Positions 47,734 through 62,543 of a stretch of DNA of 64,000 bases are shown piece after piece. Each line of letters opens with the position of its first letter. Positions within the stretch are counted from its first letter, which is position 1. The notes beneath the pieces are model-generated. The model ran no database searches and was not told the origin of the DNA. It saw only the letters and a list, made by a program, of their open reading frames with translations. Made by a program: the position numbers and the translations under genes. Origin of the DNA: Phallusia mammillata (lineage: Eukaryota); assembly GCA_965637545.1 (NCBI GenBank), contig OZ281500.1:19592001-19656000 (forward strand), in the 5' to 3' direction.

Positions 47734-48047
47734 CAGTGGTTCTCAACTCGTTTCAGGCCATGGACCACCGGCCCAGTAAAAATAATATCGTGAACCATTT
47801 CATTCTAGACTCTAGAATCTAGAGCAAGTTGGGGTAACGCATACGAAACAACCGTTTGGACTTAACATAATCCTTTGAAACTAATTTTTAGGAGGTGAAA
47901 TAAATTTTTAACAGGTAACATTTTGGTACTCCTTTAACATGTAATATGCAATCCACTCTAGTTTATCACTTAATTTAGTGGACGTCCTGTGGACCACCCA
48001 AAAAGTCATCATGGACCACTAGTGGAACCAGCAGTTGAGAACCACTT
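47734..48047. mobile_element. hAT MITE (same family as 60464-60754)
   Basis: CAGTGGTTCTCAACT termini with extensive identity to 60464-60754. Confidence 0.85.
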
Positions 48048-49561
48048 ACCTGAAAGCTGTGGGCAATAAAAATCAAAGATAAAGATGGTCTGTAACCGTG
48101 GCTTTCTTGAATGACTTTTGGGACATCCTGCTCGACCTTCCTTCCGTTGAAGTGTATGTACATATGGTAATTCCTGCCAAACGGGTAGTATCCTATTGCT
48201 TATAACTTAAGACTTAAACAAACAGCATCCAAGCCTGCTTCATATACTTGCAAATTTATTATTTCACAAAACAATGCATCACATTTCCAGTTCTTTCGAA
48301 ACGTTGTTACGCCAAAAGCATTACGAAAGCAAGTAATCGGGGATAAGTGAGTATAGCGCCACCCAGAGGCTGGCTTATGAAATAGAATCAATTCATTAGC
48401 GGCATTCTGCGGCACGTACCGGGGCACACACAACAACGCCCAGTAGTCAATAGTAACGATGCAAGGCAGATGTGTGGTATATGTACAGCACAAAAACAGG
48501 GCATTCAATTTCAGAGTCACAATCTCACATAAGCAGTCAGTCTCGACATTATTGGGCGGTGTGCTCTAAAGTTTTGGCAGTCACGAGAGGCCCTTGTTGG
48601 TGTTTTAAGACCAATACATACATGAGGGAATTACATGAGGCCAATTATCGCCCAAAGCAGGTGTACTACGTCATGATTACGCGGGGTTAGACTTCTAAAG
48701 TTTTTGATCAAGTCAAAATAAAAGTGCGAGTAATCAATAGATTTGGAATGATTTTACTTGTTTGGAAGTGAAGTGAAAAAACGCTACGGTGAAATTGGAA
48801 AAAGTCGAATTAATAAACAAAAAAGTAGATATAAAGTGGGTATATAGAATACGCTAAACATAGGCGTTGTTCAAATGACAACTTTTAAATCCAGGCGCAA
48901 ACCATAAAGCAAAACAATTTTTTTCCAAAAAAAGCACTTAACTAGGACATTTTTTTCAAATTTACAACTAAATGGTTCCTGTATAGTCTATAACTTCGGG
49001 AATCAATTTTTATAAATGTCTTTTACGCAGTCATGTCTTCAATTGTACGTCTGGAATTAAAGGTCACCATCGGAACAGAACGCTGTATAAGAGCATGGAC
49101 TCGGCTCCGTAACACATATACACAACGACATATAATTGCCATGTGTCGATGGTAATAGTAATGCACTGCGCACATAAATGCCTCAAAAAATGCACAAAAA
49201 CCACTTTTTGTTAGGTCAGAATTTTTACACTACACTGATTTGCCAGGGACCTCATATTGGCCCACACAGAAAATCGCAAAATGTTGCGGGTAATCAACAA
49301 AGCGTAAAAACTGACCAAGCGTGAACGCAAGAACGTTACGCCCCTGATACCGCAGAGTACTTTTTATCATAGAACAAACAAAACAGCGCTATCGTTAAGG
49401 AATGTGGCGTATATAAGGTTAAGTGGTGGGCTAACTGTGCCCTGCTACGGAAGCTTGAAACTGTGTAGGGATTACATAAGCCCGGCAAAAGACCAAATAA
49501 CTTTCCGATTCCAATTTGTCAAATCACTTTGCTCCGTGAACAGTGTTCAGTGGCAGATGCT

Positions 49562-52500
49562 TTAACTGGTTTCGCTTTTCTCTTGTTCAATGGCTGCAAA
49601 AAAATAGCACAATTATTGTCTTGAAAGTTACTTGTATATACTACATAGACAAGTGGTTTCCAACCGGGGGGAATTTTAAAACTTTCGGGGAGGAATTTAT
49701 TGTAAGTTGTACATGTGGTTTGTAAATAGACACTTCAGCTCTGGGAATGTAATCTGTGGAGTTGAAACAAGACCTAATTTTAAATGATCTTTGTATGCTT
49801 AAGCAACTACTATGTAGTCTATTGGGATGTTTTACGTTTTTAAGTGAGAAATTCGCCGAGTTGGGAACCACTGACATAGGCCTTTAGTTGAGATTTCCCT
49901 TTTCGACATGTAAAAGACTTGTATGTACAAGCGTGATATTAAAAAGGTCGAAGTTTACGACAATCCATAGAAGATAATGCTTAAAGTTTGCAGAGGAAAT
50001 ATAGCTGTCGCCACAAAACCTGAATACGAGACCCAAAGTATACACCAGGTGCAGAAAACGAGTTGTTTGCATACGTGTCGTATTCGGCTAAATTTGAAAA
50101 CTGCCTGGCGGGAAGTAAAACGTTTCTAAAGCAACAACGTTTTTTCGCATCCCTGCTCATTCTATTGGGTTAAAATACAAAATATAGCACCATCTCTCCA
50201 TATATCGCCCTGTATGCTACTTACTGGGTCTCTTTAATTTTTATATGGGAACATTTAACTTATTATTTGTTTAGCGTCTTTATCACTTGCATTGGTTTGT
50301 GGTTTACCTCTTAGCAGAGAACTTGCTATAATGAAAAGCTATCTGATGAAAGGCATTTTGTCAAACACGTGGGCTTTAATACCTGACGGGCAATAATCGC
50401 TTGGGCGAGCGTTTTACCCAGCGACCTAGCCCAGAAAGCAAACACGGAAATGCCGGCCAAAGATTGCAGGCCACGCCAAAACGCGATTCGTTGTTTGTCC
50501 GACTCGCAAAGAGACGCTCTTCTGCGACATGTGGGCTGAACAGTGTAAATAGCCTCACGGTGGAAAGCAATCAAGGCTGCTTGTGTACATAAGCGTGCAG
50601 TGTCTAGCGGTTTCGGACTGTGTCACGACTGGCGCCGTTTGGGAAAAGTGAAAATCAGTGCCTTGATTGTGAAGTTTGTCTATACTCTAGGACCCTAGGT
50701 GCTTTATATGAGATTCACCATTGCTGGTAAGATACTTACTCTCTTTTGTCGGCAATGGATTCTTCTCGACAGTTTCAATGTGCTGGAGCGATTCGCGTTT
50801 GAACAAATTGATGTTCTCAATTGTCTTCTCTTGGGCAATATCTGCATACATCAGTAAAATTGTAATTAAACCAATTGTGCCAACAAAAACACAATATCAA
50901 GTGTGTATGTACTGGAAACTGGAATTTTGTCAGCAAAATCGTCATGAAAGCATCAACTGGCACCTTCTCTTACGAATCATGACAAGCCGGCCTCCCTGTT
51001 TTCCAGTAACAGGGAGTATGCTATCGGTACACCACACTCTTCTACGAATCAGTTGTTATAAAATCACGTCTGTATGCCCCATGAAAAAACATGCCATGTA
51101 ATCAGATAGCGTCTTAAGTTAAACATTACAGTTGTCGCAAATTTTCAGACATTCAGACGGGCGAAAGAACAAAGGCAGCCTTTCCAGGAGACAAAATCAA
51201 CATATGACGTCACCACACTATGACGTCATAAACTTACCGGGACCGCTTGGCAGGGGGTTCTTCACCTCTGGCTCAACGTGTTTGAGACTCTCCTTGCAAA
51301 CAGACGCGGCCTGCAGTGGGACGCGCTCCCTGGCAATGTCTGAAACGCATAAGGAGTAACATGTTGAAAATATGCCCGGAATTGCGCCTTGGTCAATTTT
51401 TGTTATGGGTTGGCGTGCTGGGTTGAATGTGTGTTTACTTGTGTGGCTGAGGTCACCGGGCCCAACGATTTGTCAAGCTCTGTTTTCGGTATAGCGAAAT
51501 CAGGAAGTCTCAGTTAATTTCCTTTGTTGTGTAAGAACGATTGACCTTTTTAACAGGTAAGACGCGCTGTCATTTCAGAAGCGATTTAAAATTTAAGAAC
51601 TCTCTCCAAAGATGGAAAATATGTTCTGACATTGTAATTAGGCTTTAACATGGACATGTACAGTACAAAGGATGTACACATTTGCTTGTTCGGCATGTTC
51701 ATGATTTTCCATTTGTTTTAAAGTGCTACTGACATAGCCGTAGGCCCTTGAAGGCTAGATGGGCCAAAACCGCAAATTATACTGCAGTAATATACTGTCG
51801 GATATTGCCTTTGTTTCCGTCGGTTATAAAAATGATGGTACATTTATCCTGGTTCGTTTGTGATGTACGATTTGTTTGTTTATATTGGTCCATTGTTTTA
51901 ATTTGTTGCCGGAATTCAAGTGATGTACACACATTTAAATACGCGACTTAGGCCTGTTTTATTATTAAAAAGGTGTAAATAATACTGGTACAATTGGCAG
52001 GAGAATTTTTTTAGGCAACAGCTTTGTGAAAGAACTGATGCCAACTAAAGACCTCTTTACATTACAGGCAAAAACCGTCTTAAGTTTTCGTATCAACGTT
52101 AAACTGCTTAGTGCGGGTTTTTACACAAAGTGCTGTGCGTATAAGAAGCGTATAATTGTTGCTGCATAATAACAGGAAAGCAGAAAATGACAAAGCCGCG
52201 CTGCTTGCTACGGACAAGCCGGTTCTTAAGCCATGCCACAACACAGCATACGCGGAGAACATATACTAAACGGTGCGGATAACAGATAGGCAAGCCAGCG
52301 CCGCTATGCAGCCGGAAGGCATATTGTCGCTGCTATCGGCACGGCGAACCTATTATCACAGTATTTGGTTTCCCAGCAGAGCGCCGCCTGTGCGTAAGTG
52401 TTTGAAATGAGCTTGTACCACAGAAAAGGCTTGTGAATTGGTGGAAATGTTACCACATGACATATCTAACGTTTATGTAGAAAATTTCCATTTGACATGT

Positions 52501-55500
52501 CAATCGAGGTGTATTACTACCAATACGACGTGTTTTGACACAGAAATGTCTAAGACCATATGCTCACTTCACACAACTATTGTATTACTTCAGCAAGTTG
52601 TTGTTCTATCCTTAAACTTACCCTCCTGACTAGGCAGCGTTGTCTTCTCTACTGTGTCGACGTGCTTCATTTGAGCTTGGTCGAATTGAGCAGCTTCTTG
52701 ACGCACTTTCTCATCGGAGATTTCTAAAACAATACAACGGAAGCTGATCAACCAAATTTTGCATTTACATTTTTCCTCAGCTTTTCGAAACCGGTCTTGC
52801 ATATTGAAACCAGTTTTTTTGGAAAGTTCTAGCTATTGAATTTAACTGCCTAAATATTTCGCGCAACACCATACTAGTCATTTATTTTCCACAAGCAGAA
52901 ATAAGAAGCGTGTCTTTGATGAGTAAAACATGCTTGTAGCTCAAGGCAAACACAGCCTAAGTGGCTTGAATATGTATCTTACGTGCTGTGGTGGGCAGTG
53001 CTTGTTTTTCTGCCGTCTCGGCATGTTTCAAGTTGGTTTTGTCGAAAGCAGAGATTCCTGACATATCTGGTTTGTCCGACATGATGACTTCTTCGACTTT
53101 AGGTGGTTCCTGCACACAAACAAGCCTTCCTTGCAATATTCAACAAAATATCATGCATCTTAGGTTTACGTGGTTTGGAAAGACAGACAAAACAATTTAA
53201 AAAAGAAACTAAAAGTGCACGGGCATACTTTTTATATGGTTTACACTTTTTTACTGCCTTGAACTTTATTACAGAACCAATGACTGTTGCCTTGTCTAAT
53301 ACAAAATATTTACAGGCTTTATTGGCGGTGAACGATCAGCACAATAACATTCTATTGCTAGACAAATTCGCACGACTGTTGTTGCTTTACAAGTTTACAA
53401 GTTACAACACCCACAATATTTGCTTTCGGGAGGAGCTGATAAAGAGTGGAGAAAAACATCATGAGTGGAGCTTAACGTTTACCTCGCTGTTACGTCATAA
53501 ACCAAGACAACAATCAACATCCGAATAATAACAGCACGCTCAAAGTTTAATAAGTCAATCTTCCAATACACGCATACAATTATGACCAGTTAAACCTAAT
53601 AAAACAGAACCTAACCAAGTTATCCTAAACTAATTTGAGTTATAGGCCTACAATTCCACATTTCGATAACAATGGTGGTTCACATAAGGGCTTAAAAAAA
53701 CTACTGTAAAATGGAACTATTTTTACCTCGGATTGCTGTGGTTCTTCTTCGACAGGCTTTGCTTCCTCAGTCTGTTCAGCTGGCGTCTCTTCCTCTGTTT
53801 TTACCTCTTCAACTGCTGACTGCTCAACGGTTGCTGGAGTTTCTGCTGGAGCTTCAGGTTCACTCTTTTGTGGCTCTGCCTCTGGGCTTTGTTCTTCTTG
53901 GGTTTGTTCGGCAGGGGCTTCTTCTACTGGAGCCTCTGCTGGTGCTTGTTCTGGTGCTTGGTCTTCAGTCTTTGCTTGATTTTCGCCTGATGCTGGGTCA
54001 GCGTTACCTTCGCCTTCGGGTTTCTTTTTATTTTTACCTCCTAAAAACGGAAGACAACGGGGTGGTTAAACAGCTAGAAACTATGTAGCAAAGTAGGCCA
54101 AAATGTTTTGAGCGAAAATTTCGACTTGGTAGCATGGAAACTTCCATCAATCTCCTACAATGCTGTTCGCAAGCACAAATACCAAGGCTTGTGACTAGAT
54201 TAAACAGGTTTTATCATAATTTATAGCTACGAAACAAATCCTATTGCACTTTGCACAGTCTGTTGCTTTTTACGACTGACAGAGAGCACAAAAAACACTG
54301 AGCTGCATTTTTTAAAACGTTTTGCTTTTGCCTTACATCCGCAACCAAGCAACATCACCATGCTCACGACTTATTGGTGCTACGTTAAGTAAACCGGTAA
54401 ACCTTAGATCCCATACAAGCGTTAAAGCGTAACCCGTTCGAGCCTGTTGTACTGACTTCCTGCTGCGTGAAAGGAATCGCGAACATAAATCGGCACCAGC
54501 GCACCTCTAAATGCTACCTACGACCAACTGAGGAGCCAAATATGAGATGAGCAAAGTCGTTTCTCCTATTTCCCACCAACGAAATGAGTAAAAAAGAAAG
54601 GTAGCGAGGCCTCAAGGTACCGGTCCATTAGCCATTACATCAGCGGATGCGAAAGAAAGGACTTTAGTGGCCACCCGGGCTCCAATATATATCACGTGAC
54701 AAGCAATTACCAACACATAATCGCACGGTGGTATGGCGGAACTAGTCGCCGTGCAAGAAATTAATTGCACACTGGATATCCTAATACACGACGAAGCCGC
54801 ATAATTAACGAATGTGCTTATCTGGGTCACTGACTATACATTTCCAGCGAAATTACAATTGCAAATCCATTTCACACACTTAAGAACACACCATCACTTA
54901 ACACTTGTTTGCTAAAACGCTCTGGTTTAAAATGTGACTCTCTGAAAGCAATGAACAATTTCAACAAACGTTAGTTGATCTTCTCTCACAACCATAGCGA
55001 CTAACGGACTATGATAGTCACTCCGGAGGCAGCTTTCCTGTTGAATCATTGTGAAAACGAGAAATACCCACAATCGTATACAGTCGTTTGCCTATGCGCG
55101 TCCAATATGGTGTCTGCAATGTTTGCACAGAGCACAGCAAATAAAACGGGCGCGGCCAAGCTAGAAAACTTTTAACGTTCAACTAAATTCCAACGATGGT
55201 AACTGTTTTACACAACATTTAACGATAACTTTTGGCGCGTTTTTTTGGCCAGGTAGTCAATCATTTACTTTCTGCGCACAGAAACACTCTTTCCTTGTGA
55301 ACCGATTGCTGTTTTTGGCAACCTAATCTTACTAAAATATCGCCCTTAATATTCACTGGATATAAACATCGCTTGTACAGTACCAGCGGCAACACTATAC
55401 AGCTTTATCGAATGCTCATAAAACTGGAAAGTCTTGCACAATTGGCCATGTAAGTCTGCGATGTCAACAAGGTTCAATGGGCCTTGTAACTCAACAACAG

Positions 55501-58500
55501 TGTTGTTAAAATGGATCCCGTTGCCATTAAGCCCTTCAAAGTAGAGGCTAATTGCGTGCAAAAGCATTTAAGCCTGTAGTTTTATTCCGGTTCTATTGCG
55601 TCTAATTTGTTTAGTTTTAATTTTACGAGTCCATACATTACGGCTGTCATGCAATTTTCCATTTCCTGTCATTCATTAAACGTTACATGTTTCTGCATAT
55701 TGCAGATAACGTTTCAAGCTACTAACGTTTAGTAGACGCGAAATGTCACACAAAATTGTTACAATCATAATATTTTTATATTGCCACTTCTAGTTACAGG
55801 ATAATAAAAAGCTGCCAACCAACGTTAACCAGTTACCAAGTGGTATATATAGCTGGCAAATATCAGCATATGTTGCCAAATAACAAAGTAAGGAGAAACA
55901 TATCACGCCGCCCCGAACAATACAGTTATTTACCAAGGGCTGTGTTACGTTACCCTGCATTATGTCATTTCATTTTGCCAAATATATCTTATTACGCCAC
56001 CAACAATGTATAAATAAATAAACAAACAAACGTACTTCGGTAGGCAAAGTCTACTAGAGACTGCAACCAAAAAGCAGCAGTATTCTAAGTTTAATTGTAA
56101 CACAATAATACATTGTATAACGTCACAATACCAAAACAATGATATAAGACCACTAACTTTCAACCACTACAAGCGCAGTCAGTTGGCAGCACTGCACGGC
56201 TAAAACAGCCCTGCTATAACCAACAGCAATTTTAAGCCGCCTGGAGCGAGGTAACGCGCATTCCTGTGGCTAAAAATACTGAAGCTTCTTCCCAAAAAGG
56301 CTTTTTTTGCCTAGCTTTCACGCGCAGCACCAGGGGTTGGTTTGCTCCCGCTATCACTGAAATTGGACGCTTCGCTGCATAAGTAATATCGACCACGCTG
56401 AGTGGCCCCATCATTTGTAGATTATGTTGATTTTGCTAAGAGTCACTTAAACTGTTGAGGCGCAGTTACTGATGGCTGCTGGATTCTGCTTAATTGGATG
56501 AAATCTTTTGATAAGGACAACTATTAAAACCCTATTTCCTATTTTGTTGGAACATACATAAGCTTTATACGTCTAAAACTCGAAGTAGAAAGGCAGTGGG
56601 TTACCTTGCCAAAAAACACCTATATATTAAGCTTTGCTTCCGTATGCATAACAAGAATTCAAAACATACATAAAGCCGGCAAAAAAAGTCTGGACCATAA
56701 ATCGGCGTTGAAAAAATAAATTTGAACACAATGCCATCCAAGCGTTAGCTTCACGGTGACATCATAGCATAGACGGGCCTAACCAAGCACCTCAAAAGGG
56801 AGTTGAAGAGAAGACTGAGCTTGAATCGCAGAGTAGTGTGCAACACCAAATTTGGGTTCAAGAGAAATTTCAAGCGGTTGCTTGCGTCACAGCATATTTT
56901 AAGCCTTGACTGAGCGACAAGCGGTTTTGAAAGCATACGATTGCGGGCCTTGTTTGAACATAATAATCAATTTCAATCAGAAAGTTGGTAGAACAACAAT
57001 TTTGCGGTGTATTTTAGTTGTTATGCGAAATGTTAAATCGTAAAATACAGGTTTTCAACTTCTACAAAACGGCGTACAATTGTAAAAAAAAAACATTGCA
57101 AAGTTGTTCAGATCCCAATAAACAGAAATAGTTTCTACTTGCTATGATACTATTTTTACAGGAGGCCTACATACAAAAGTAACCGAAGTATACAATAAAA
57201 AGTTTGTGGCCATCTTTATCACGTTAACTACTTAATTTAATAGTTTTCATTTTGACAGGAGTATACATTTATGGTAATGTGAAACAGGTTATTTCGCGTC
57301 AAAAATAACGTGCGCATTAACGTCTTATTGCGTTAAAAATATTTGCAGATTTCGGACGCTTGGTGACACTACAGAGACGAAGAACACAAATTTATCAGTA
57401 CAGAGTCTACAGACGAAACGCGCTTGCAAGCAATTTGCCAACCGAGCAGCTAGCTGTAGTAGCGATGAGTGCGAAAAATAGTTCCATTTTTTCAAGAAAG
57501 TTTGCGGTTGGGTAAAAAGGTTTACGTTGGTAGGTGTCTAATGATAGTTAACAACGTTGGTGTAGTTTTGACAACAATTCTTGGATTTTAAACAAAATCG
57601 ACCATCCCCCAGAAACAATTGCACAAAAAACGAGATTCCAGCGATACTATATCGAAGAGCAATTTTCCGGCTAAGCCATGCGAAAAACCATTGCGTAAGT
57701 GAAGATAGTATTTTTTCACATGACCGAACGGAACGCAAAACATACGTGACATATTTTAGTTAGGAGGTTAAATCTTCTGCGATCAGCGTAAAATTCATTT
57801 AACACGCCTAGATGGTCGCGCTTTACGCTTGATTAATTTTGGCGGCACAAAATCCAACAAAAAACGTGCAAAAAATCTGGTGCTTAATTGTGAGTACAAA
57901 ACGATTTTTTTGCAGCAGTTATTATTAATGATGAATGTTAATAGGACCTAATGTTACTTTTCCTGTGATTTTGTCGGCAGAGCATAGCTTGCGAGGTAAT
58001 GACTGCTTTATTTAAAGCAAAGTGAACATGTTCTTTTTAATGAAAGCGTTTAAGCCTACATGATGGTTAATAACAAGTCTTACACTTGGCACTATGGTAC
58101 ACCAACATTTACTTTTATTCAACAAATTATTTTGAAGAAAAAAACGCGCAAGCAGAAGGGACATAATGGTATTCAGACTTAGAAAGGATTTTGCAGGTGC
58201 CTATAATACAGAACAAAAATGTCAAACTAGCAGATTTGCAAATTGTCGAGACGATTTTATTAAAACGTTCCACAGCGGAATGAATTTCCACACTGACAGC
58301 GTCAAACGTTATGAATTATTTATCAGGGAAATACCGCAACACCTTTGACGACAAAATACACAGAGAGTCAATCGATGTCGAAAGTTTTGCAGCAACGTCA
58401 CAACAGAGTTACGTAATTATTGCGACATAGGCTATTTCGCGTGGCTTTATGCAACATTAAAACAAAAATGCAAGACTTCTTTAGTCATGAGATGAAGATT

Positions 58501-60140
58501 ATTATCTCCAAATTAGAAGGTCTAATCAACACACGGTCAAATAAGGTAAAAAATCTGAGAAAAGATTTTTAAAATTAAGCAAGGTCAAACTTTATAGCAT
58601 TTTTAAATAAAGCTATATTGGTACTTTAAGGTAAATTGTTGTTTCGATATTTTGTCAATTTAAACATTTTTATCTTGAATATAACCAACACATATCATTT
58701 TTCAAATAGTAATATATACAAGTCGTGGGAATAGGGTTAACATTTATACTTGTTTTGCTTGGTTCTATGCATCCTGTATCTTCTCACTGTTTCGTATAGC
58801 TGTTGCCGAAAGCCGCGAGGCTAGATTATCAGGTCTATCTGCTGAAAACTGTTTAACACGTAGGTGCGACCCAGACCTAACTGGTAATCAAATGTATGAT
58901 CTGCTTATCTGCATTAAATTAATATTCAATTATTACTTTCACTACAATGATCTAAATCAGTGATTCATATACTTTTTTTACATGCGTACCACTTGGAGAT
59001 TTCTTACCGAGCTCACATACCACACATGAATCAAACAATTAGTTTTTGAATCAAAATAAAGTATAGTATGCTTGCGTAACACAAGAAAGTCATTCACGAA
59101 CCACAGTTTTAAAACCACTAAACCTTATGATTGTAGACGAATCTGACCAACTGGTACTGTTAAGGACATTGTGTTTAAAACAAGGGTATGGGCGGATACC
59201 TGGAAGTATCTGTTACGGTTACATGGCAACCGGTAAAAAACACGTTTCCGGGATGCTAGGAAATGTAAACTTGACTCATCCATATTTCTCCTCGGACGTA
59301 ATCGGCGTTGAAAGTTTAGGTTACCCACTGGAGAGTCAAATGTACAACGATTCGTGTTTCATGCGTGCATCATTGCGTGATAGAAACCACTTTGACCTTA
59401 CAGATAACATGTCAGGTCAAAGTCGCATAATTTCTGGTAAATTCTGGTAAACCGGACATGTGCAAAAAGTTACTTGACACGCATGTTATGACATGGCCAA
59501 TTAAGCTGTAGCATATACACCATGTCGATATTGCACAAAAACCAAACAAAATTTGCAGTATACCGCCAATGAAGTGGCTTCTCATTTAACAGATAGACAC
59601 TTGAAAAACAGATACTGAAACAAAAACTGACAATCATTTTCTTTCCTGGTATAAGCATGTTCTAACGATGCCCAATTTTGTTGGAAACCCCCTCAAGAGT
59701 CATTTTCCGATATTCAAAATATATGTAGATAATTCGATAACATGGCGCCGTCGATATTCTAAAACCCCGTTAACAGTAAGAGTTAAGATAAGCTCAAGGG
59801 ATTTAAAAATGAACACTCTGAATGTGCATTACCAGAACAAAATACGTTGCGTTTATTGAGTGAATAAAAACGGTTCTGACAATAGGACACAAAAAGTTCG
59901 TTTATATTTATCAGATATAGCTGAAATGCCCAGGCAACTTACATATATGCAAAACATGCAAGAGTGAGTTACGTTTGTGGTTTATAAACTAAGCAGCGGT
60001 GCGAATTGGGTCTCAGTATTCACTTGTTACACAGCGAAAGTGAACGATTTATCCCTTCAGCTTATTTCATAAAACAAGCAAAAGCAAAACACAGACTTAC
60101 CTTCGGTCTTAGCCTTCTTGTTGCCGAAGAAATTTCCCAT
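49562..60140 (-). CDS. Four-repeat beta-thymosin (WH2-like) protein with an MG- start and a Glu/Ala/Pro-rich linker (about 272 aa)
   Basis: Exons 60140-60101 (MGNFFGNKKAKTE), 54040-53727 (acidic), 53109-52983 (..MSDKPDMSGISAFDKTNLKHAETAEKQALP), 52723-52622, 51339-51238, 50841-50740 (each 102 nt, one repeat), 49593-49562 (TIEQEKSETS*); total 819 nt, phase-consistent. The thymosin exons are certain; the link to the 60140 exon is inferred. Confidence 0.85.
49651..49873. mobile_element. hAT MITE (related to 37617-38082)
   Basis: AAGTGGTTTCCAAC / GTTGGGAACCACTG termini. TSD ACATAGAC / ACATAGGC. Confidence 0.7.
54337..54361 (-). CDS. Candidate alternative first coding exon (MVMLLGCG-C) of the thymosin gene
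   Basis: ATG at 54361 with a strong donor T|GTAAGG in phase 1. It is open only if spliced to the second AG of the TAGGAG tandem acceptor (exon starting 54037). Confidence 0.35.
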
Positions 60141-60463
60141 GACTAAAAGGAGTTCGTGCGCTTTGTATGAATATATGACACTTCTTCCGTAAATCGAGAG
60201 ACAATCTCAAACCGGGGTTCTTTGGCCTATTGTAATGCACCTGACCACTTTTACAGACGCAGCGTGCAGTGCCTACAGATGCCTTAAATGGGAACACTGG
60301 AAAGTAAAAACAATAGAATCATGTGAACTTTGCGGCCCACGTAATAAACCTGCTAGATTTACGTCCTAGAAAGGATGCTTCAGATTACACTGCAGTTGTT
60401 TTCTGTAGCAATTATTTCGGTGGGGCTATTTGCCGTCAAAAATATTTAAAAAACATCTTCAAC

Positions 60464-60754
60464 CAGTGGTTCTCAACTCGTTTCGGGCCATGGACCACCG
60501 GCCCAGTAAAAATAACGTCGTGGACCATTTCTTTTTGGAGCAAAATTAACGTACGCATACGAAACAACCATTCGGGCTCGAAACACAATTCTTTAAAACC
60601 GATTTTAAAGAAGTGAGATACAATTATAAACAGCTTACATTTTGATAGTCTTTCAATAAATGATATGCAATGGTATCTAATTTATCAACAAATCTAGTGG
60701 ACGTCCTGTGGACCACCCAAAAAGTCATCATGGACCACCAGTTGAGAACCACTG
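60464..60754. mobile_element. hAT MITE
   Basis: Perfect TIR CAGTGGTTCTCAACT. TSD TCTTCAAC / TCTTAAAC. Confidence 0.9.
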
Positions 60755-62543
60755 TCTTAAACCGTCAAGGGTGCATTTCTCATAAACAAAACAAGGGACA
60801 TACCCTACAATAATTAATATAGCGAATTGTCTCAGCAATAACTGGTACCGTGCGTTTTATGCAACGATATTTTGGCATAGACGACCCGAAGATCTTAAGG
60901 AATAGACGACCTTATGAGGAAATTCATTTGCCCATTTTAACGGTACAGGCCCATGTAAACATTTTCATGGATTAACGTCACTGGCACAAAAATAAATTAC
61001 GACATTATCTGGCTACGATCGTTAAACTGTCATGTGCTTTGTATTGCTGGCTGACGTCCGGTTGCACCATCGGCCCTAAATCATGCACCAACTGTTAACA
61101 TACAACTTTTTCTTTGTTTTGCAATTTGCATATGCAATACTGCTGTACGTAAACCTACACAAATGAACAACTCAATGTGGCTGAGCTGGTATAAACTCCT
61201 AACAAGCCATCGCAAAGCGACTCGTGTAAAATAGGTAAAAGGACATGCCTTTGGCTAAGTTTTTACATAATCTGAACATGTGGCCTGGTAGGATGCAAAC
61301 ATTACATCATTGACACCGAACAAGTTTTAACTCGTGATGGATATACATTACCTAATGGCTACCTGCTTGCACCCTTACACGCGTTTTTCATGTCTGTTTC
61401 GATCAACGCAAATCTCAGATATTTGGCTGTTGAAAGTCAGGGTTAAACCATTATGAGCAATTTCAAAGTCTAAAAACGTACTCTGAATTGGGCACCTGTT
61501 TTATACTGCTAATTCTTTGCTAAACTGAAAAAAGTATTGCGTAACTTGCTCCTTGTAATTTACAAAACACTTTAAGCGCCTACAGCTATCCAGTATATTG
61601 AATAAGAAGTGCCAACGTTGCTGCAGCACACCAGTCACATCACAACAAATCTGGCGCTCAATGATTTGGCCCAAATGCTGAATCGCTGCGTGTCAACGCA
61701 ATTTCCTGTGCAGCCAGGCTGCATGTTGAACTTGGTTACACACTGACCAGTCCCGAGTGTGTGTGTGAACGCTCTGTTAGTTTGTACAAGTTGTATCCGT
61801 TTACGGTGACCACTTGGGTAAGCTTTAGTGGCAACATGGCTTAGCATGTTTTACATACATTCCTACCCTGAGATAGTCAACGCACTAACATGGTTTTAAC
61901 TAACTTTTGAACAATTAAAGTTCCTGGTAAAAGCAATCATATCCATTTAGTGGTGCATTATTTCGCAACATAGGTTTAGAAGTGGAACATATGCTCGCAG
62001 CGACACAGACTTAACCAATGCGCACCACAATAGTTAAAGAACATTTGCAAGATTATATTTTAAACACTCCAGCATGCACATATTGACCTTAAGATAGTCA
62101 TATCAAGAACAAAAACTAAATTTTGTATTATTGGCTTTTGGTTTCTTTTAACTTTCCAACTTCATTTCTTGTTGTCGGAAAAAAACGCCTGTGTCAACAA
62201 ACGCGTAGTAAATAGCTAACTCCATCAGCAAACAACAAGCTACTGACAAACATTAGTTACCATATTCCATACGCATTCCACTGCTTGCTCAATAACAAGC
62301 CCAAACATATTTAAACGCGCGGCTATCTAAATCTGATTTAAACTGTAATTCACCAAATTCTGAAGTATAGCATTGTACTTAAATATAACACACACGACAA
62401 CACTGTCAAATAAATAAAGCCTTAAAACTAGTTTTAATAAAGGTCTCAGCACCCCAAGGCGAAATAAGACGCAAAAACAACTCTTTCTGTTTCTAACCAA
62501 GGCGTTTGCTCTATTGTGGGCATTCAGGCGTAGCGTCTGCTCT

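What the first reader, a model, noticed from the sequence alone, without database searches (positions are those of the whole stretch)
49562..60140. Tetra-repeat beta-thymosin with an N-myristoylation-type start and a MARCKS/BASP1-like acidic arm
Seen: MGNFFGNKKAK, then a 104-codon Glu/Ala/Pro/Gln-rich exon starting GGKNKKKP, then four thymosin repeats (LKHAET, MKHVDT, LKHVEP, LQHIET). Established: multi-repeat beta-thymosins (ciboulot, tetrathymosin) are soluble actin-monomer binders, and MG plus a basic cluster is the membrane anchor used by BASP1 and MARCKS. Inference: a membrane-tethered actin-monomer delivery protein with a long flexible spacer, an architecture I do not recognise as described.
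Basis: partly seen in the sequence, partly recalled or inferred. Interest (0 to 1): 0.78.

Follow-up and report, generated by a model that had tools for sequence, protein, structure and literature searches.

The report
Putatively lipid-anchored four-repeat beta-thymosin
This animal (reportedly tunicate) gene really makes one spliced mRNA that joins a myristoylation-type, lysine-rich start and a long acidic disordered arm to four actin-binding beta-thymosin repeats, a layout I found in no other thymosin protein, but the lipid anchor itself is only predicted.

Summary
A seven-exon gene on the minus strand (CDS 60140 to 49562) encodes 272 residues:
- a start MGNFFGNKKAKTE;
- a 314-nt Glu/Ala/Pro/Gln-rich exon;
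- four beta-thymosin repeats, one per phase-1 exon;
- a short TIEQEK tail.

Assembled transcripts from four independent studies each carry all five downstream junctions in one contig. Each then runs on into sequence that is the exact complement of exon 1.

The acidic exon is single-copy. A distant relative has it with the same splice sites. There, only the exon aligns, and changes pile up at third codon positions (dN/dS about 0.08). So the exon is translated and constrained.

The N-terminus fits the PROSITE myristoylation pattern but lacks the classical Ser/Thr6. It carries net +6 over 21 residues and is followed by an arm of net -29 that is predicted disordered. There is no sequence homology to BASP1, so the likeness is by analogy only.

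None of 191 other thymosin-repeat proteins retrieved has such an N-terminal arm, but that sample was capped and biased.

Lipidation, membrane binding and actin delivery are inferred, not shown. Verdict: a real gene and a new variant of a known family, of moderate interest. This scan holds no such finding on other DNA.

The parts
60101..60321 (-). Exon 1. The 5'UTR runs from about 60141 to 60258-60321. The CDS is 60140-60101 and encodes MGNFFGNKKAKTE plus one base (phase 1).
   Evidence: ATG with G at -3 and G at +4, and an AG|GTAAGT donor. Loose ends of 156-219 nt behind 54042 in four runs are the reverse complement of this exon. RNA runs hold half the words of 60141-60420. An in-frame stop sits at 60207-60209 with no in-frame upstream ATG. 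The stretch is single-copy in the genome.
53727..54040 (-). Acidic exon of 314 nt. It opens with the basic run GGKNKKKP. The rest is rich in Glu, Ala, Pro and Gln; the exon holds 29 Glu, 16 Ala, 14 Pro and 11 Gln.
   Evidence: Present in the main transcript contig of all four runs. Single-copy in the genome. A relative's exon (P0001 / L014) is 63-67% identical with the same splice sites, and only the exon aligns. pN 0.19, pS 0.73. Mismatches at codon positions 1/2/3 are 21/17/49, p = 3e-5. AlphaFold2 mean pLDDT 54.5 with no regular structure. No Pfam family matched.
52983..53109 (-). Beta-thymosin repeat 1. It starts with EPPKVEEVI, then MSDKPD...LKHAET.
   Evidence: PF01290, 47.5 bits, E 1.5e-12. 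Matches thymosin beta-4 and beta-9 chains in the PDB (4pl8, 1hj0, 4pl7). Joint 53108/9 to 53726/7 in four runs.
52622..52723 (-). Beta-thymosin repeat 2 (MKHVDT), phase 1 at both ends.
   Evidence: PF01290, 34.2 bits. Joints in four runs.
51238..51339 (-). Beta-thymosin repeat 3 (LKHVEP), the most divergent. It has no Phe in the N-terminal helix region.
   Evidence: PF01290, 17.5 bits, below the 24.8 cut-off. Joints in four runs.
50740..50841 (-). Beta-thymosin repeat 4 (LQHIET).
   Evidence: PF01290, 28.9 bits. Joints in four runs.
49500..49593 (-). Terminal exon. The CDS is 49593-49562 (TIEQEKSETS, then stop), followed by the 3'UTR.
   Evidence: Acceptor after a T-rich tract. Joint 49593 to 50740 in four runs, and record lengths in table 8.

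Best explanation
This is a real, expressed, seven-exon gene for a 272-residue, largely disordered protein with three modules.

1. Residues 1-21: Gly2 in an N-myristoyltransferase-compatible context (G-N-F-F-G-N), two Phe, and seven Lys (net +6). This is the 'myristate plus basic cluster' type of inner-leaflet anchor used by Src and BASP1.
2. Residues 22-127: a Glu/Ala/Pro/Gln-rich arm of net charge -29 that acts as a flexible spacer.
3. Residues 128-272: four beta-thymosin/WH2 repeats and a TIEQEK tail that bind actin monomers.

The most likely working: the protein is myristoylated co-translationally. It sits reversibly on acidic-lipid membranes. There it holds several polymerisable or sequestered actin monomers within a few tens of nanometres of the membrane.

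Shown here: the gene model, the splicing, the expression, the coding constraint on the acidic exon, and Thymosin family membership of repeats 1, 2 and 4.
Inferred: actin binding (from the family), and lipidation, membrane binding and any effect on actin assembly (from motifs).

My odds: gene model 0.97, actin binding 0.85, myristoylated 0.6, membrane-tethered actin-monomer function as a whole about 0.45.
For: - One contig per run in four runs from four studies joins the terminal exon, the four repeat exons and the acidic exon through five exact GT..AG joints. Each contig continues into the complement of exon 1.
- The acidic exon and exon 1 are single-copy, so a retrocopy cannot explain the intron-less contigs.
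- The 5'UTR is contiguous with the genome, carries an in-frame stop and has no in-frame upstream ATG. The ATG has G at -3 and +4.
- Pfam Thymosin scores are above the cut-off for three of the four repeats, and repeat 1 matches solved thymosin beta-4 and beta-9 chains.
- PS00008 is met at Gly2. Net charge is +6 over residues 1-21 and -29 over residues 22-127.
- A relative keeps the exon, its splice phase and all four Lys of the exon's basic run. Introns are unalignable, dN/dS is about 0.08, and third-position changes are in excess with p = 3e-5.
- The arm is predicted without structure.
- The literature states that MG is the absolute requirement for myristoylation and that Ser/Thr6 is neither sufficient nor critical (PMC4736023).
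Against: - Nothing here tests lipidation. PS00008 is a permissive pattern, and position 6 is Gly rather than the classical Ser/Thr.
- Exon 1 could not be checked in any other species, so the key MG start has no conservation evidence.
- Repeat 3 is below the Pfam cut-off.
- A strongly acidic arm next to the basic cluster could neutralise it rather than leave it free for lipids.
- All runs laid were assembled contigs, which hide rare isoforms and say nothing about tissue or level.
- The RNA nature of the runs is the tool's guess, supported here only by the intron-less joints.
Confidence: 0.5

Rival explanations
1. The long protein is made but is not lipidated. It is a soluble multi-repeat beta-thymosin whose acidic, disordered N-terminal arm tunes actin binding electrostatically or simply keeps the protein extended and soluble. 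The MG start is incidental.
For: The motif match is to a permissive pattern and Ser/Thr6 is missing (PMC4736023). WH2/beta-thymosin function is reported to depend on the electrostatic environment in which the domain binds actin (PMC4506460). The constraint measured applies to the acidic exon, not to exon 1.
Against: Gly2, Asn3, a small residue at position 6 and Lys at positions 8 and 9 all fit NMT preferences. Seven Lys and two Phe packed into 21 residues directly at a Gly2 start is the usual make-up of a membrane anchor. The Lys run at the start of exon 2 is fully conserved in the relative.
Confidence: 0.3
2. The basic N-terminus (KKAK ... KNKKKP) is a nuclear localisation signal, and the long isoform works in the nucleus. 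BASP1 also does so, and nuclear actin regulators exist.
For: KKAK fits the K-K/R-x-K/R monopartite pattern (sequence; the pattern is from my own knowledge). That BASP1 has a nuclear role is also my own knowledge and was not tested here.
Against: The cluster sits at the extreme N-terminus behind Gly2, where lipidation is the commoner use. Nothing else in the protein suggests a nuclear role. No tool result bears on it.
Confidence: 0.07
3. The functional product is the ordinary short thymosin starting at Met128 (MSDKPD). The upstream in-frame reading is a by-product of a long leader, as in many ORF calls on arthropod thymosin transcripts.
For: Several database thymosins carry long, non-conserved N-terminal extensions that look like translated leaders. 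One example is the P0192 cluster, whose members P0193 and P0194 start differently. MSDKPD is the canonical thymosin start.
Against: The acidic exon shows protein-level constraint in this frame between two species whose introns no longer align. The ATG at 60140 is the first in-frame ATG and sits in a strong context. No joint or loose end at 53109 points to another 5' exon in four runs.
Confidence: 0.05

Closest known systems
Multi-repeat beta-thymosins (Drosophila ciboulot, C. elegans tetrathymosin, insect and crustacean thymosin-repeat proteins; Pfam PF01290)
   Same: Tandem Thymosin repeats with an LKHxET-type motif, an EKNPLP linker and a TIEQEK tail. There are four repeats, as in tetrathymosin, and Pfam scores are significant. 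The repeats align in register with those of 191 database relatives.
   Different: Those proteins begin directly with the first repeat, or with short or non-acidic leaders. None of the 191 examined has an N-terminal extension of 40 or more residues with 20% or more Asp+Glu. None combines an MG start with five or more Lys/Arg in its first 21 residues. This protein has 127 extra residues with a lipidation-type start.
BASP1 (CAP-23/NAP-22), and more loosely MARCKS and GAP-43
   Same: Gly2 start followed at once by a lysine cluster, then a long Glu/Ala/Pro-rich, hydrophobic-poor, disordered chain. The comparison with BASP1 rests on my knowledge of that protein.
   Different: No detectable sequence homology. 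Pfam BASP1 (PF05466) gives no match on the exon or in the whole genome at E up to 10. BASP1 has no actin-binding repeats. MARCKS keeps its basic effector domain far from the N-terminus.
Membrane-associated tandem-WH2 actin regulators (Spire, Cordon-bleu, WASP family)
   Same: Several WH2/beta-thymosin-type actin-monomer sites would be held at a membrane. This is the setting in which such domains feed or nucleate barbed-end growth (review PMC4506460).
   Different: Those proteins reach membranes through folded domains or partner proteins, not through a myristoyl-polybasic N-terminus. Their WH2 domains are short and lack the thymosin C-terminal half. No homology outside the repeat.
Plant THRUMIN1
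   Same: An N-myristoylated, plasma-membrane-tethered actin-binding protein whose actin-binding part is an intrinsically disordered region containing a predicted WH2 motif (PMC8566215).
   Different: Unrelated in sequence. Its predicted WH2 motif proved dispensable. It bundles F-actin and has a glutaredoxin-like domain.

Membership tests
Beta-thymosin / Thymosin (Pfam PF01290) | Match to the family HMM above the gathering score (24.8 bits) | tested here: met
   Repeats 1, 2 and 4 score 47.5, 34.2 and 28.9 bits. Repeat 3 scores 17.5 bits, below the cut-off.
Beta-thymosin / Thymosin (Pfam PF01290) | An N-terminal amphipathic segment, then an LKKTET-type motif and an EKNPLP-type linker in each repeat | tested here: met
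   The motifs LKHAET, MKHVDT, LKHVEP and LQHIET, each followed by xEK..LP, lie in register. Repeat 1 aligns residue by residue with thymosin beta-4 and beta-9. Repeat 3 lacks the conserved Phe.
Beta-thymosin / Thymosin (Pfam PF01290) | Binds monomeric actin | not testable with these tools
   Inferred from family membership only. No complex prediction was run.
N-myristoylated proteins (NMT substrates) | Gly at position 2 of the true translation start | tested here: met
   ATG at 60140 followed by GGA. An in-frame stop lies upstream in a contiguous 5'UTR with no in-frame upstream ATG. Exon 1 is joined to the rest in four runs.
N-myristoylated proteins (NMT substrates) | PROSITE PS00008 pattern G-{EDRKHPFYW}-x(2)-[STAGCN]-{P} | tested here: met
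   GNFFGN matches. The pattern is permissive, so this is weak evidence.
N-myristoylated proteins (NMT substrates) | Classical consensus MGxxxS/T | tested here: not met
   Position 6 is Gly. Ser/Thr6 is reported to be neither sufficient nor critical (PMC4736023).
N-myristoylated proteins (NMT substrates) | Myristate actually attached, dependent on Gly2 | not testable with these tools
   Needs labelling with a myristate analogue and a G2A control.
BASP1 family (Pfam PF05466) | Sequence match to the family HMM | tested here: not met
   No Pfam family at E up to 1 on the acidic exon. No PF05466 match in the whole genome at E up to 10, although that search's controls rang nowhere either. The joined exon 1 plus exon 2 N-terminus could not be scanned, because no reference exists for it.
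BASP1 family (Pfam PF05466) | Myristoylation-type start, adjacent Lys cluster, and a long acidic Ala/Pro/Glu-rich disordered chain | tested here: met
   Composition and charge and a low-confidence, structure-free model. This is a likeness of design, not of descent.

The most novel reading that the evidence does not exclude
Tunicates may carry a lipid-anchored tandem beta-thymosin. This would be a myristoyl-polybasic, BASP1-like disordered arm that holds four actin-monomer sites at the inner face of the membrane. It would act as a membrane-proximal monomer feeder or nucleator, and would fill, by convergence, the role that BASP1/MARCKS-type proteins play in vertebrates. No BASP1 homologue was detected in this genome.
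Probability: 0.35. Interest if true: 0.7.

Novelty: new variant of a known kind. Interest (0 to 1): 0.5.

Why it matters
Beta-thymosins, including the multi-repeat ones, are treated as small soluble buffers or shuttles of actin monomers. A version with its own lipid anchor and a 100-residue tether would place that activity at the membrane, where barbed ends grow. It would be a simple natural test of how local monomer supply shapes actin assembly. It would also be a new example of the myristoyl-electrostatic design outside BASP1, MARCKS and Src. The gene is short, the predicted anchor is 21 residues long, and a single G2A change would test the idea.

Tried and rejected
- **Direct lay of the exon 1 to acidic-exon junction.** Not possible: the two sides are 6,062 bases apart and the limit is 6,000. 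The loose-end letters were used instead.
- **Whole 272-residue protein as a query.** The spliced protein has no reference and I did not type it. Full-length searches (homologues, encoding contigs, Pfam on the joined N-terminus, fold) were therefore left out.
- **Word search with the 59-residue open frame around repeat 1.** No candidate.
- **Exhaustive search with the acidic exon.** One hit only, P0001. Its contig, L014, holds neither exon 1 nor a thymosin exon, so the fusion could not be shown in the relative.
- **ESM Atlas on the acidic exon.** Only unnamed clusters below 0.9; uninformative.
- **BASP1 Pfam.** No match on the exon or in the genome.
- **Rfam on 48000-61500.** Nothing.
- **An alternative first exon for a short form in intron 2.** Low-depth contigs at 53328-53539 do not end at the only GT donor there (53482) and carry no joint. 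Rejected as evidence for a short isoform.
- **Lead P0192.** This arthropod-type thymosin ORF starts MGCSAKK. It was rejected because cluster members P0194 (MSSKGCSAKK) and P0193 start differently, so the extension is probably a translated leader.
- **Second profile search (A3).** It was dominated by its spider first row, so its ranking favours arthropods and says little about tunicates.
- **Supplement of the Ciona single-cell preprint** (probe sequence for 'Thymosin beta-related'). Not held.
Exon 1 is single-copy, so there is no link.
Full report
**What is in the sequence**

The minus strand between 60140 and 49562 carries seven open pieces that join in frame.
- Exon 1 (60140-60101) reads MGNFFGNKKAKTE and ends one base into the next codon, at an AG|GTAAGT donor.
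- The next exon (54040-53727, 314 nt) completes a Gly codon and reads GGKNKKKP. The rest of it is rich in Glu, Ala, Pro and Gln; the exon holds 29 Glu, 16 Ala, 14 Pro and 11 Gln.
- Four exons follow: 53109-52983, 52723-52622, 51339-51238 and 50841-50740. Each holds one beta-thymosin repeat. The last three are exactly 102 nt and are phase 1 at both ends.
- A terminal exon begins at 49593 and supplies TIEQEKSETS and the stop at 49562.

All introns are GT..AG with pyrimidine-rich acceptors. The CDS is 819 nt, 272 residues. The only correction is that exon 1 also encodes Thr-Glu.

**Is it more than chance**

Pfam Thymosin (PF01290, cut-off 24.8 bits) scores 47.5, 34.2, 17.5 and 28.9 bits for repeats 1 to 4. 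Repeat 3 is below the cut-off and lacks the conserved Phe. Repeat 1 aligns with solved thymosin beta-4 and beta-9 chains.

**Transcripts**

About fourteen small runs of this organism from four studies (P1-P4), guessed to be RNA, hold 0.32-0.39 of the sampled words of 52500-54100. This matches the exon share of that stretch, 0.34, only if the acidic exon is included. Two large runs, presumably DNA, hold all or nearly all of the words.

I laid four runs from four studies on 49500-55499. In each run a single contig of 1.3-2.3 kb carries all five joints:
- 49593|50740
- 50841|51238
- 51339|52622
- 52723|52983
- 53108|53726

All five skip CT..AC on the plus strand, which is GT..AG on the minus strand.

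Behind 54042, each contig continues for 156-219 letters. The first 30 of these are the exact reverse complement of exon 1 (…TTTCTTCGGCAACAAGAAGGCTAAGACCGA). The two bases by which the alignment overshoots the exon (54041-54042) are the AG shared by the end of exon 1 and the acceptor.

No other joint and no loose end at 53109 was reported. The long form is thus the only isoform assembled in these runs, although contigs can hide rare forms.

The acidic exon and exon 1 are each single-copy in the 240-Mb genome. A processed retrocopy therefore cannot explain the intron-less contigs.

**The start codon**

RNA runs hold half the words of 60141-60420. Together with the loose-end lengths, this puts the 5' ends at about 60258-60321, contiguous with the genome. 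In that leader an in-frame stop lies at 60207-60209, and there is no in-frame ATG. The only upstream ATG (60322) is out of frame, opens a 12-codon ORF, and lies at or beyond the longest contig end. The ATG at 60140 has G at -3 and G at +4. MGNFF… is therefore the N-terminus of the ORF.

**Is the acidic exon really coding**

An exhaustive HMMER search of 1.8 billion representative proteins with the acidic exon found one hit at E up to 0.001. This is P0001, a 140-residue ORF call on a 2.5-kb genomic contig of run DRR090687.

P0001 reads through the same acceptor (…ag|GAGGTAAG) and the same donor (TCCGAG|gt). The exon lies between them and is 63-67% identical in protein. At the DNA level only the exon aligns (L014 1601-1889 against window 54043-53725), and the flanking introns show nothing.

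Over 94 aligned codons:
- pN is 0.19 and pS is 0.73, giving dN/dS of about 0.08 with dS saturated.
- Mismatches at codon positions 1, 2 and 3 number 21, 17 and 49 (p = 3e-5).
- The length difference is 30 nt, a multiple of three.

The exon is therefore translated in this frame and is under purifying selection in two well-separated species. The first 25 residues, including all four Lys of the exon's basic run, are the best-kept part. The relative's contig reaches neither exon 1 nor a thymosin exon, so the fusion itself is shown only in this genome.

**Properties of the N-terminal 127 residues**

- Gly2 and its neighbours fit PROSITE PS00008 (GNFFGN).
- Residues 1-21 hold 7 Lys and one acidic residue (net +6), plus two Phe.
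- Residues 22-127 have net charge -29 and 7.5% hydrophobic residues.
- AlphaFold2, run on the two-sequence alignment, gives mean pLDDT 54.5, pTM 0.11 and no regular secondary structure. This fits a disordered arm, with the caveat that the alignment is shallow.

The classical MGxxxS/T consensus is not met, because position 6 is Gly. A paper on an experimentally proven atypical substrate states that MG is the absolute requirement and that Ser/Thr6 is neither sufficient nor critical (PMC4736023). From my own knowledge, Asn at position 3, a small residue at 6 and Lys at 8-9 are favourable, and Arf and Arl proteins (for example GNIFAN… and GGFFSS…) are myristoylated with bulky residues at positions 4-5. 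I put the odds of myristoylation at about 0.6.

**Relation to BASP1 and MARCKS**

The likeness is one of design: Gly2, an adjacent Lys cluster, then a long acidic Ala/Pro/Glu-rich chain. There is no sequence relationship. No Pfam family matches the acidic exon at E up to 1. The BASP1 model finds nothing in the whole genome at E up to 10, though that search's control genomes gave no signal either. The protein should not be filed as a BASP1 family member.

**Is the architecture known**

Two profile word-searches seeded with this gene's repeats and the genome's paralogous repeats returned 630 and 866 thymosin-repeat proteins within length windows of about 78-247 and 135-429 residues. The best 120 of each were listed.

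I mapped the repeats on all 191 distinct proteins obtained.
- None has an N-terminal extension of 40 or more residues with 20% or more Asp+Glu. This protein has 127 residues at 28%.
- None combines an MG start with five or more Lys/Arg among its first 21 residues.
- The long extensions that do occur are non-acidic and look like translated leaders.
- One tempting case, P0192 (MGCSAKK…), fell away because its cluster-mates start differently.

Full-text searches that combined beta-thymosin with myristoylation, BASP1 or WH2 found nothing describing such a protein.

Limits:
- Only the top 120 of each list were visible.
- The second profile was dominated by its spider first row.
- No tunicate protein was named in either list.
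- The full-length protein could not be used as a query.

**Context**

The genome has other thymosin-repeat exons on the same chromosome, at C7:2.18 Mb (one beginning with a canonical MATKPD start) and at C7:2.21 Mb. No copy of the acidic exon lies near them.

I did not test that. In Ciona, a 'beta-thymosin-like / Thymosin beta-related' gene is a standard marker of epidermal sensory neurons (PMC1481523; bioRxiv 10.1101/319327). Whether it is the orthologue is untested. If it is, a neuronal, BASP1-like thymosin would be a notable parallel.

**How it most likely works**

Shown: the mRNA, the ORF, the coding constraint and the thymosin repeats.

Inferred from the family: each good repeat binds an actin monomer through an N-terminal helix and the LKHxET motif. 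Multi-repeat members such as ciboulot act like profilin rather than as pure sequesterers (my knowledge; the general framework is in PMC4506460).

Inferred from motifs: myristate plus the Lys/Phe cluster holds the N-terminus on acidic inner-leaflet lipids, and the acidic arm projects the four actin sites away from the membrane.

The main rival is a soluble protein whose acidic arm only modulates actin binding. Minor rivals are a nuclear signal, and a short thymosin made from Met128. The last is disfavoured by the codon-position evidence.

**Verdict**

- Observation: confirmed.
- Interpretation: partly supported.
- Novelty: a new variant of a known family (multi-repeat beta-thymosin), not a new kind of system.
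- Interest: moderate (0.5). It would rise if Gly2 and the Lys cluster prove conserved, or if lipidation is shown.

Noticed in passing
L010:6735-6815, L010:7567-7659, L013:224-328, L013:1856-1948 (G000 C7 at about 2.18 and 2.21 Mb): Other beta-thymosin repeat exons lie on the same chromosome, 17 Mb away. One has a canonical MATKPDLSQVEQF... start, and there is a pair of near-duplicate repeats (…QFDKTKLNHTETEEKNTLPTKES). The acidic exon has no match anywhere else in the genome. Their gene models were not worked out.
   Followed up: partly
window 53328-53539 (intron between the acidic exon and repeat 1): Short low-depth contigs (206 and 153 nt, depth 3-4) occur in two of the four runs, with no joint and no Rfam match. 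They could be residual pre-mRNA or a small unannotated transcript. They do not fit a spliced alternative first exon.
   Followed up: partly
window 49707-49752 (intron between repeat 4 and the terminal exon): Short contig pieces with a summed depth of 70-90 occur in three runs, and unrelated sequence continues on both sides. This looks like a fragment of an expressed repeat or mobile element, not part of this gene.
   Followed up: no
window 53856: A>G on the plus strand in the contigs of two runs. It is the third position of Pro75 (CCT to CCC), so a synonymous polymorphism.
   Followed up: yes
window 60322 (minus strand): The only upstream ATG opens a 12-codon out-of-frame ORF at the very 5' edge of the longest transcript contig. 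It may lie upstream of most start sites.
   Followed up: partly
proteins P0192, P0193, P0194 (Logan transcript contigs of an unnamed, arthropod-like species): ORF calls on thymosin transcripts often extend upstream of the real start. One such extension mimics a dual-acylation start (MGCSAKK), but it is not kept in the sister sequences. This is a caution for anyone screening thymosins by N-terminal motif.
   Followed up: yes
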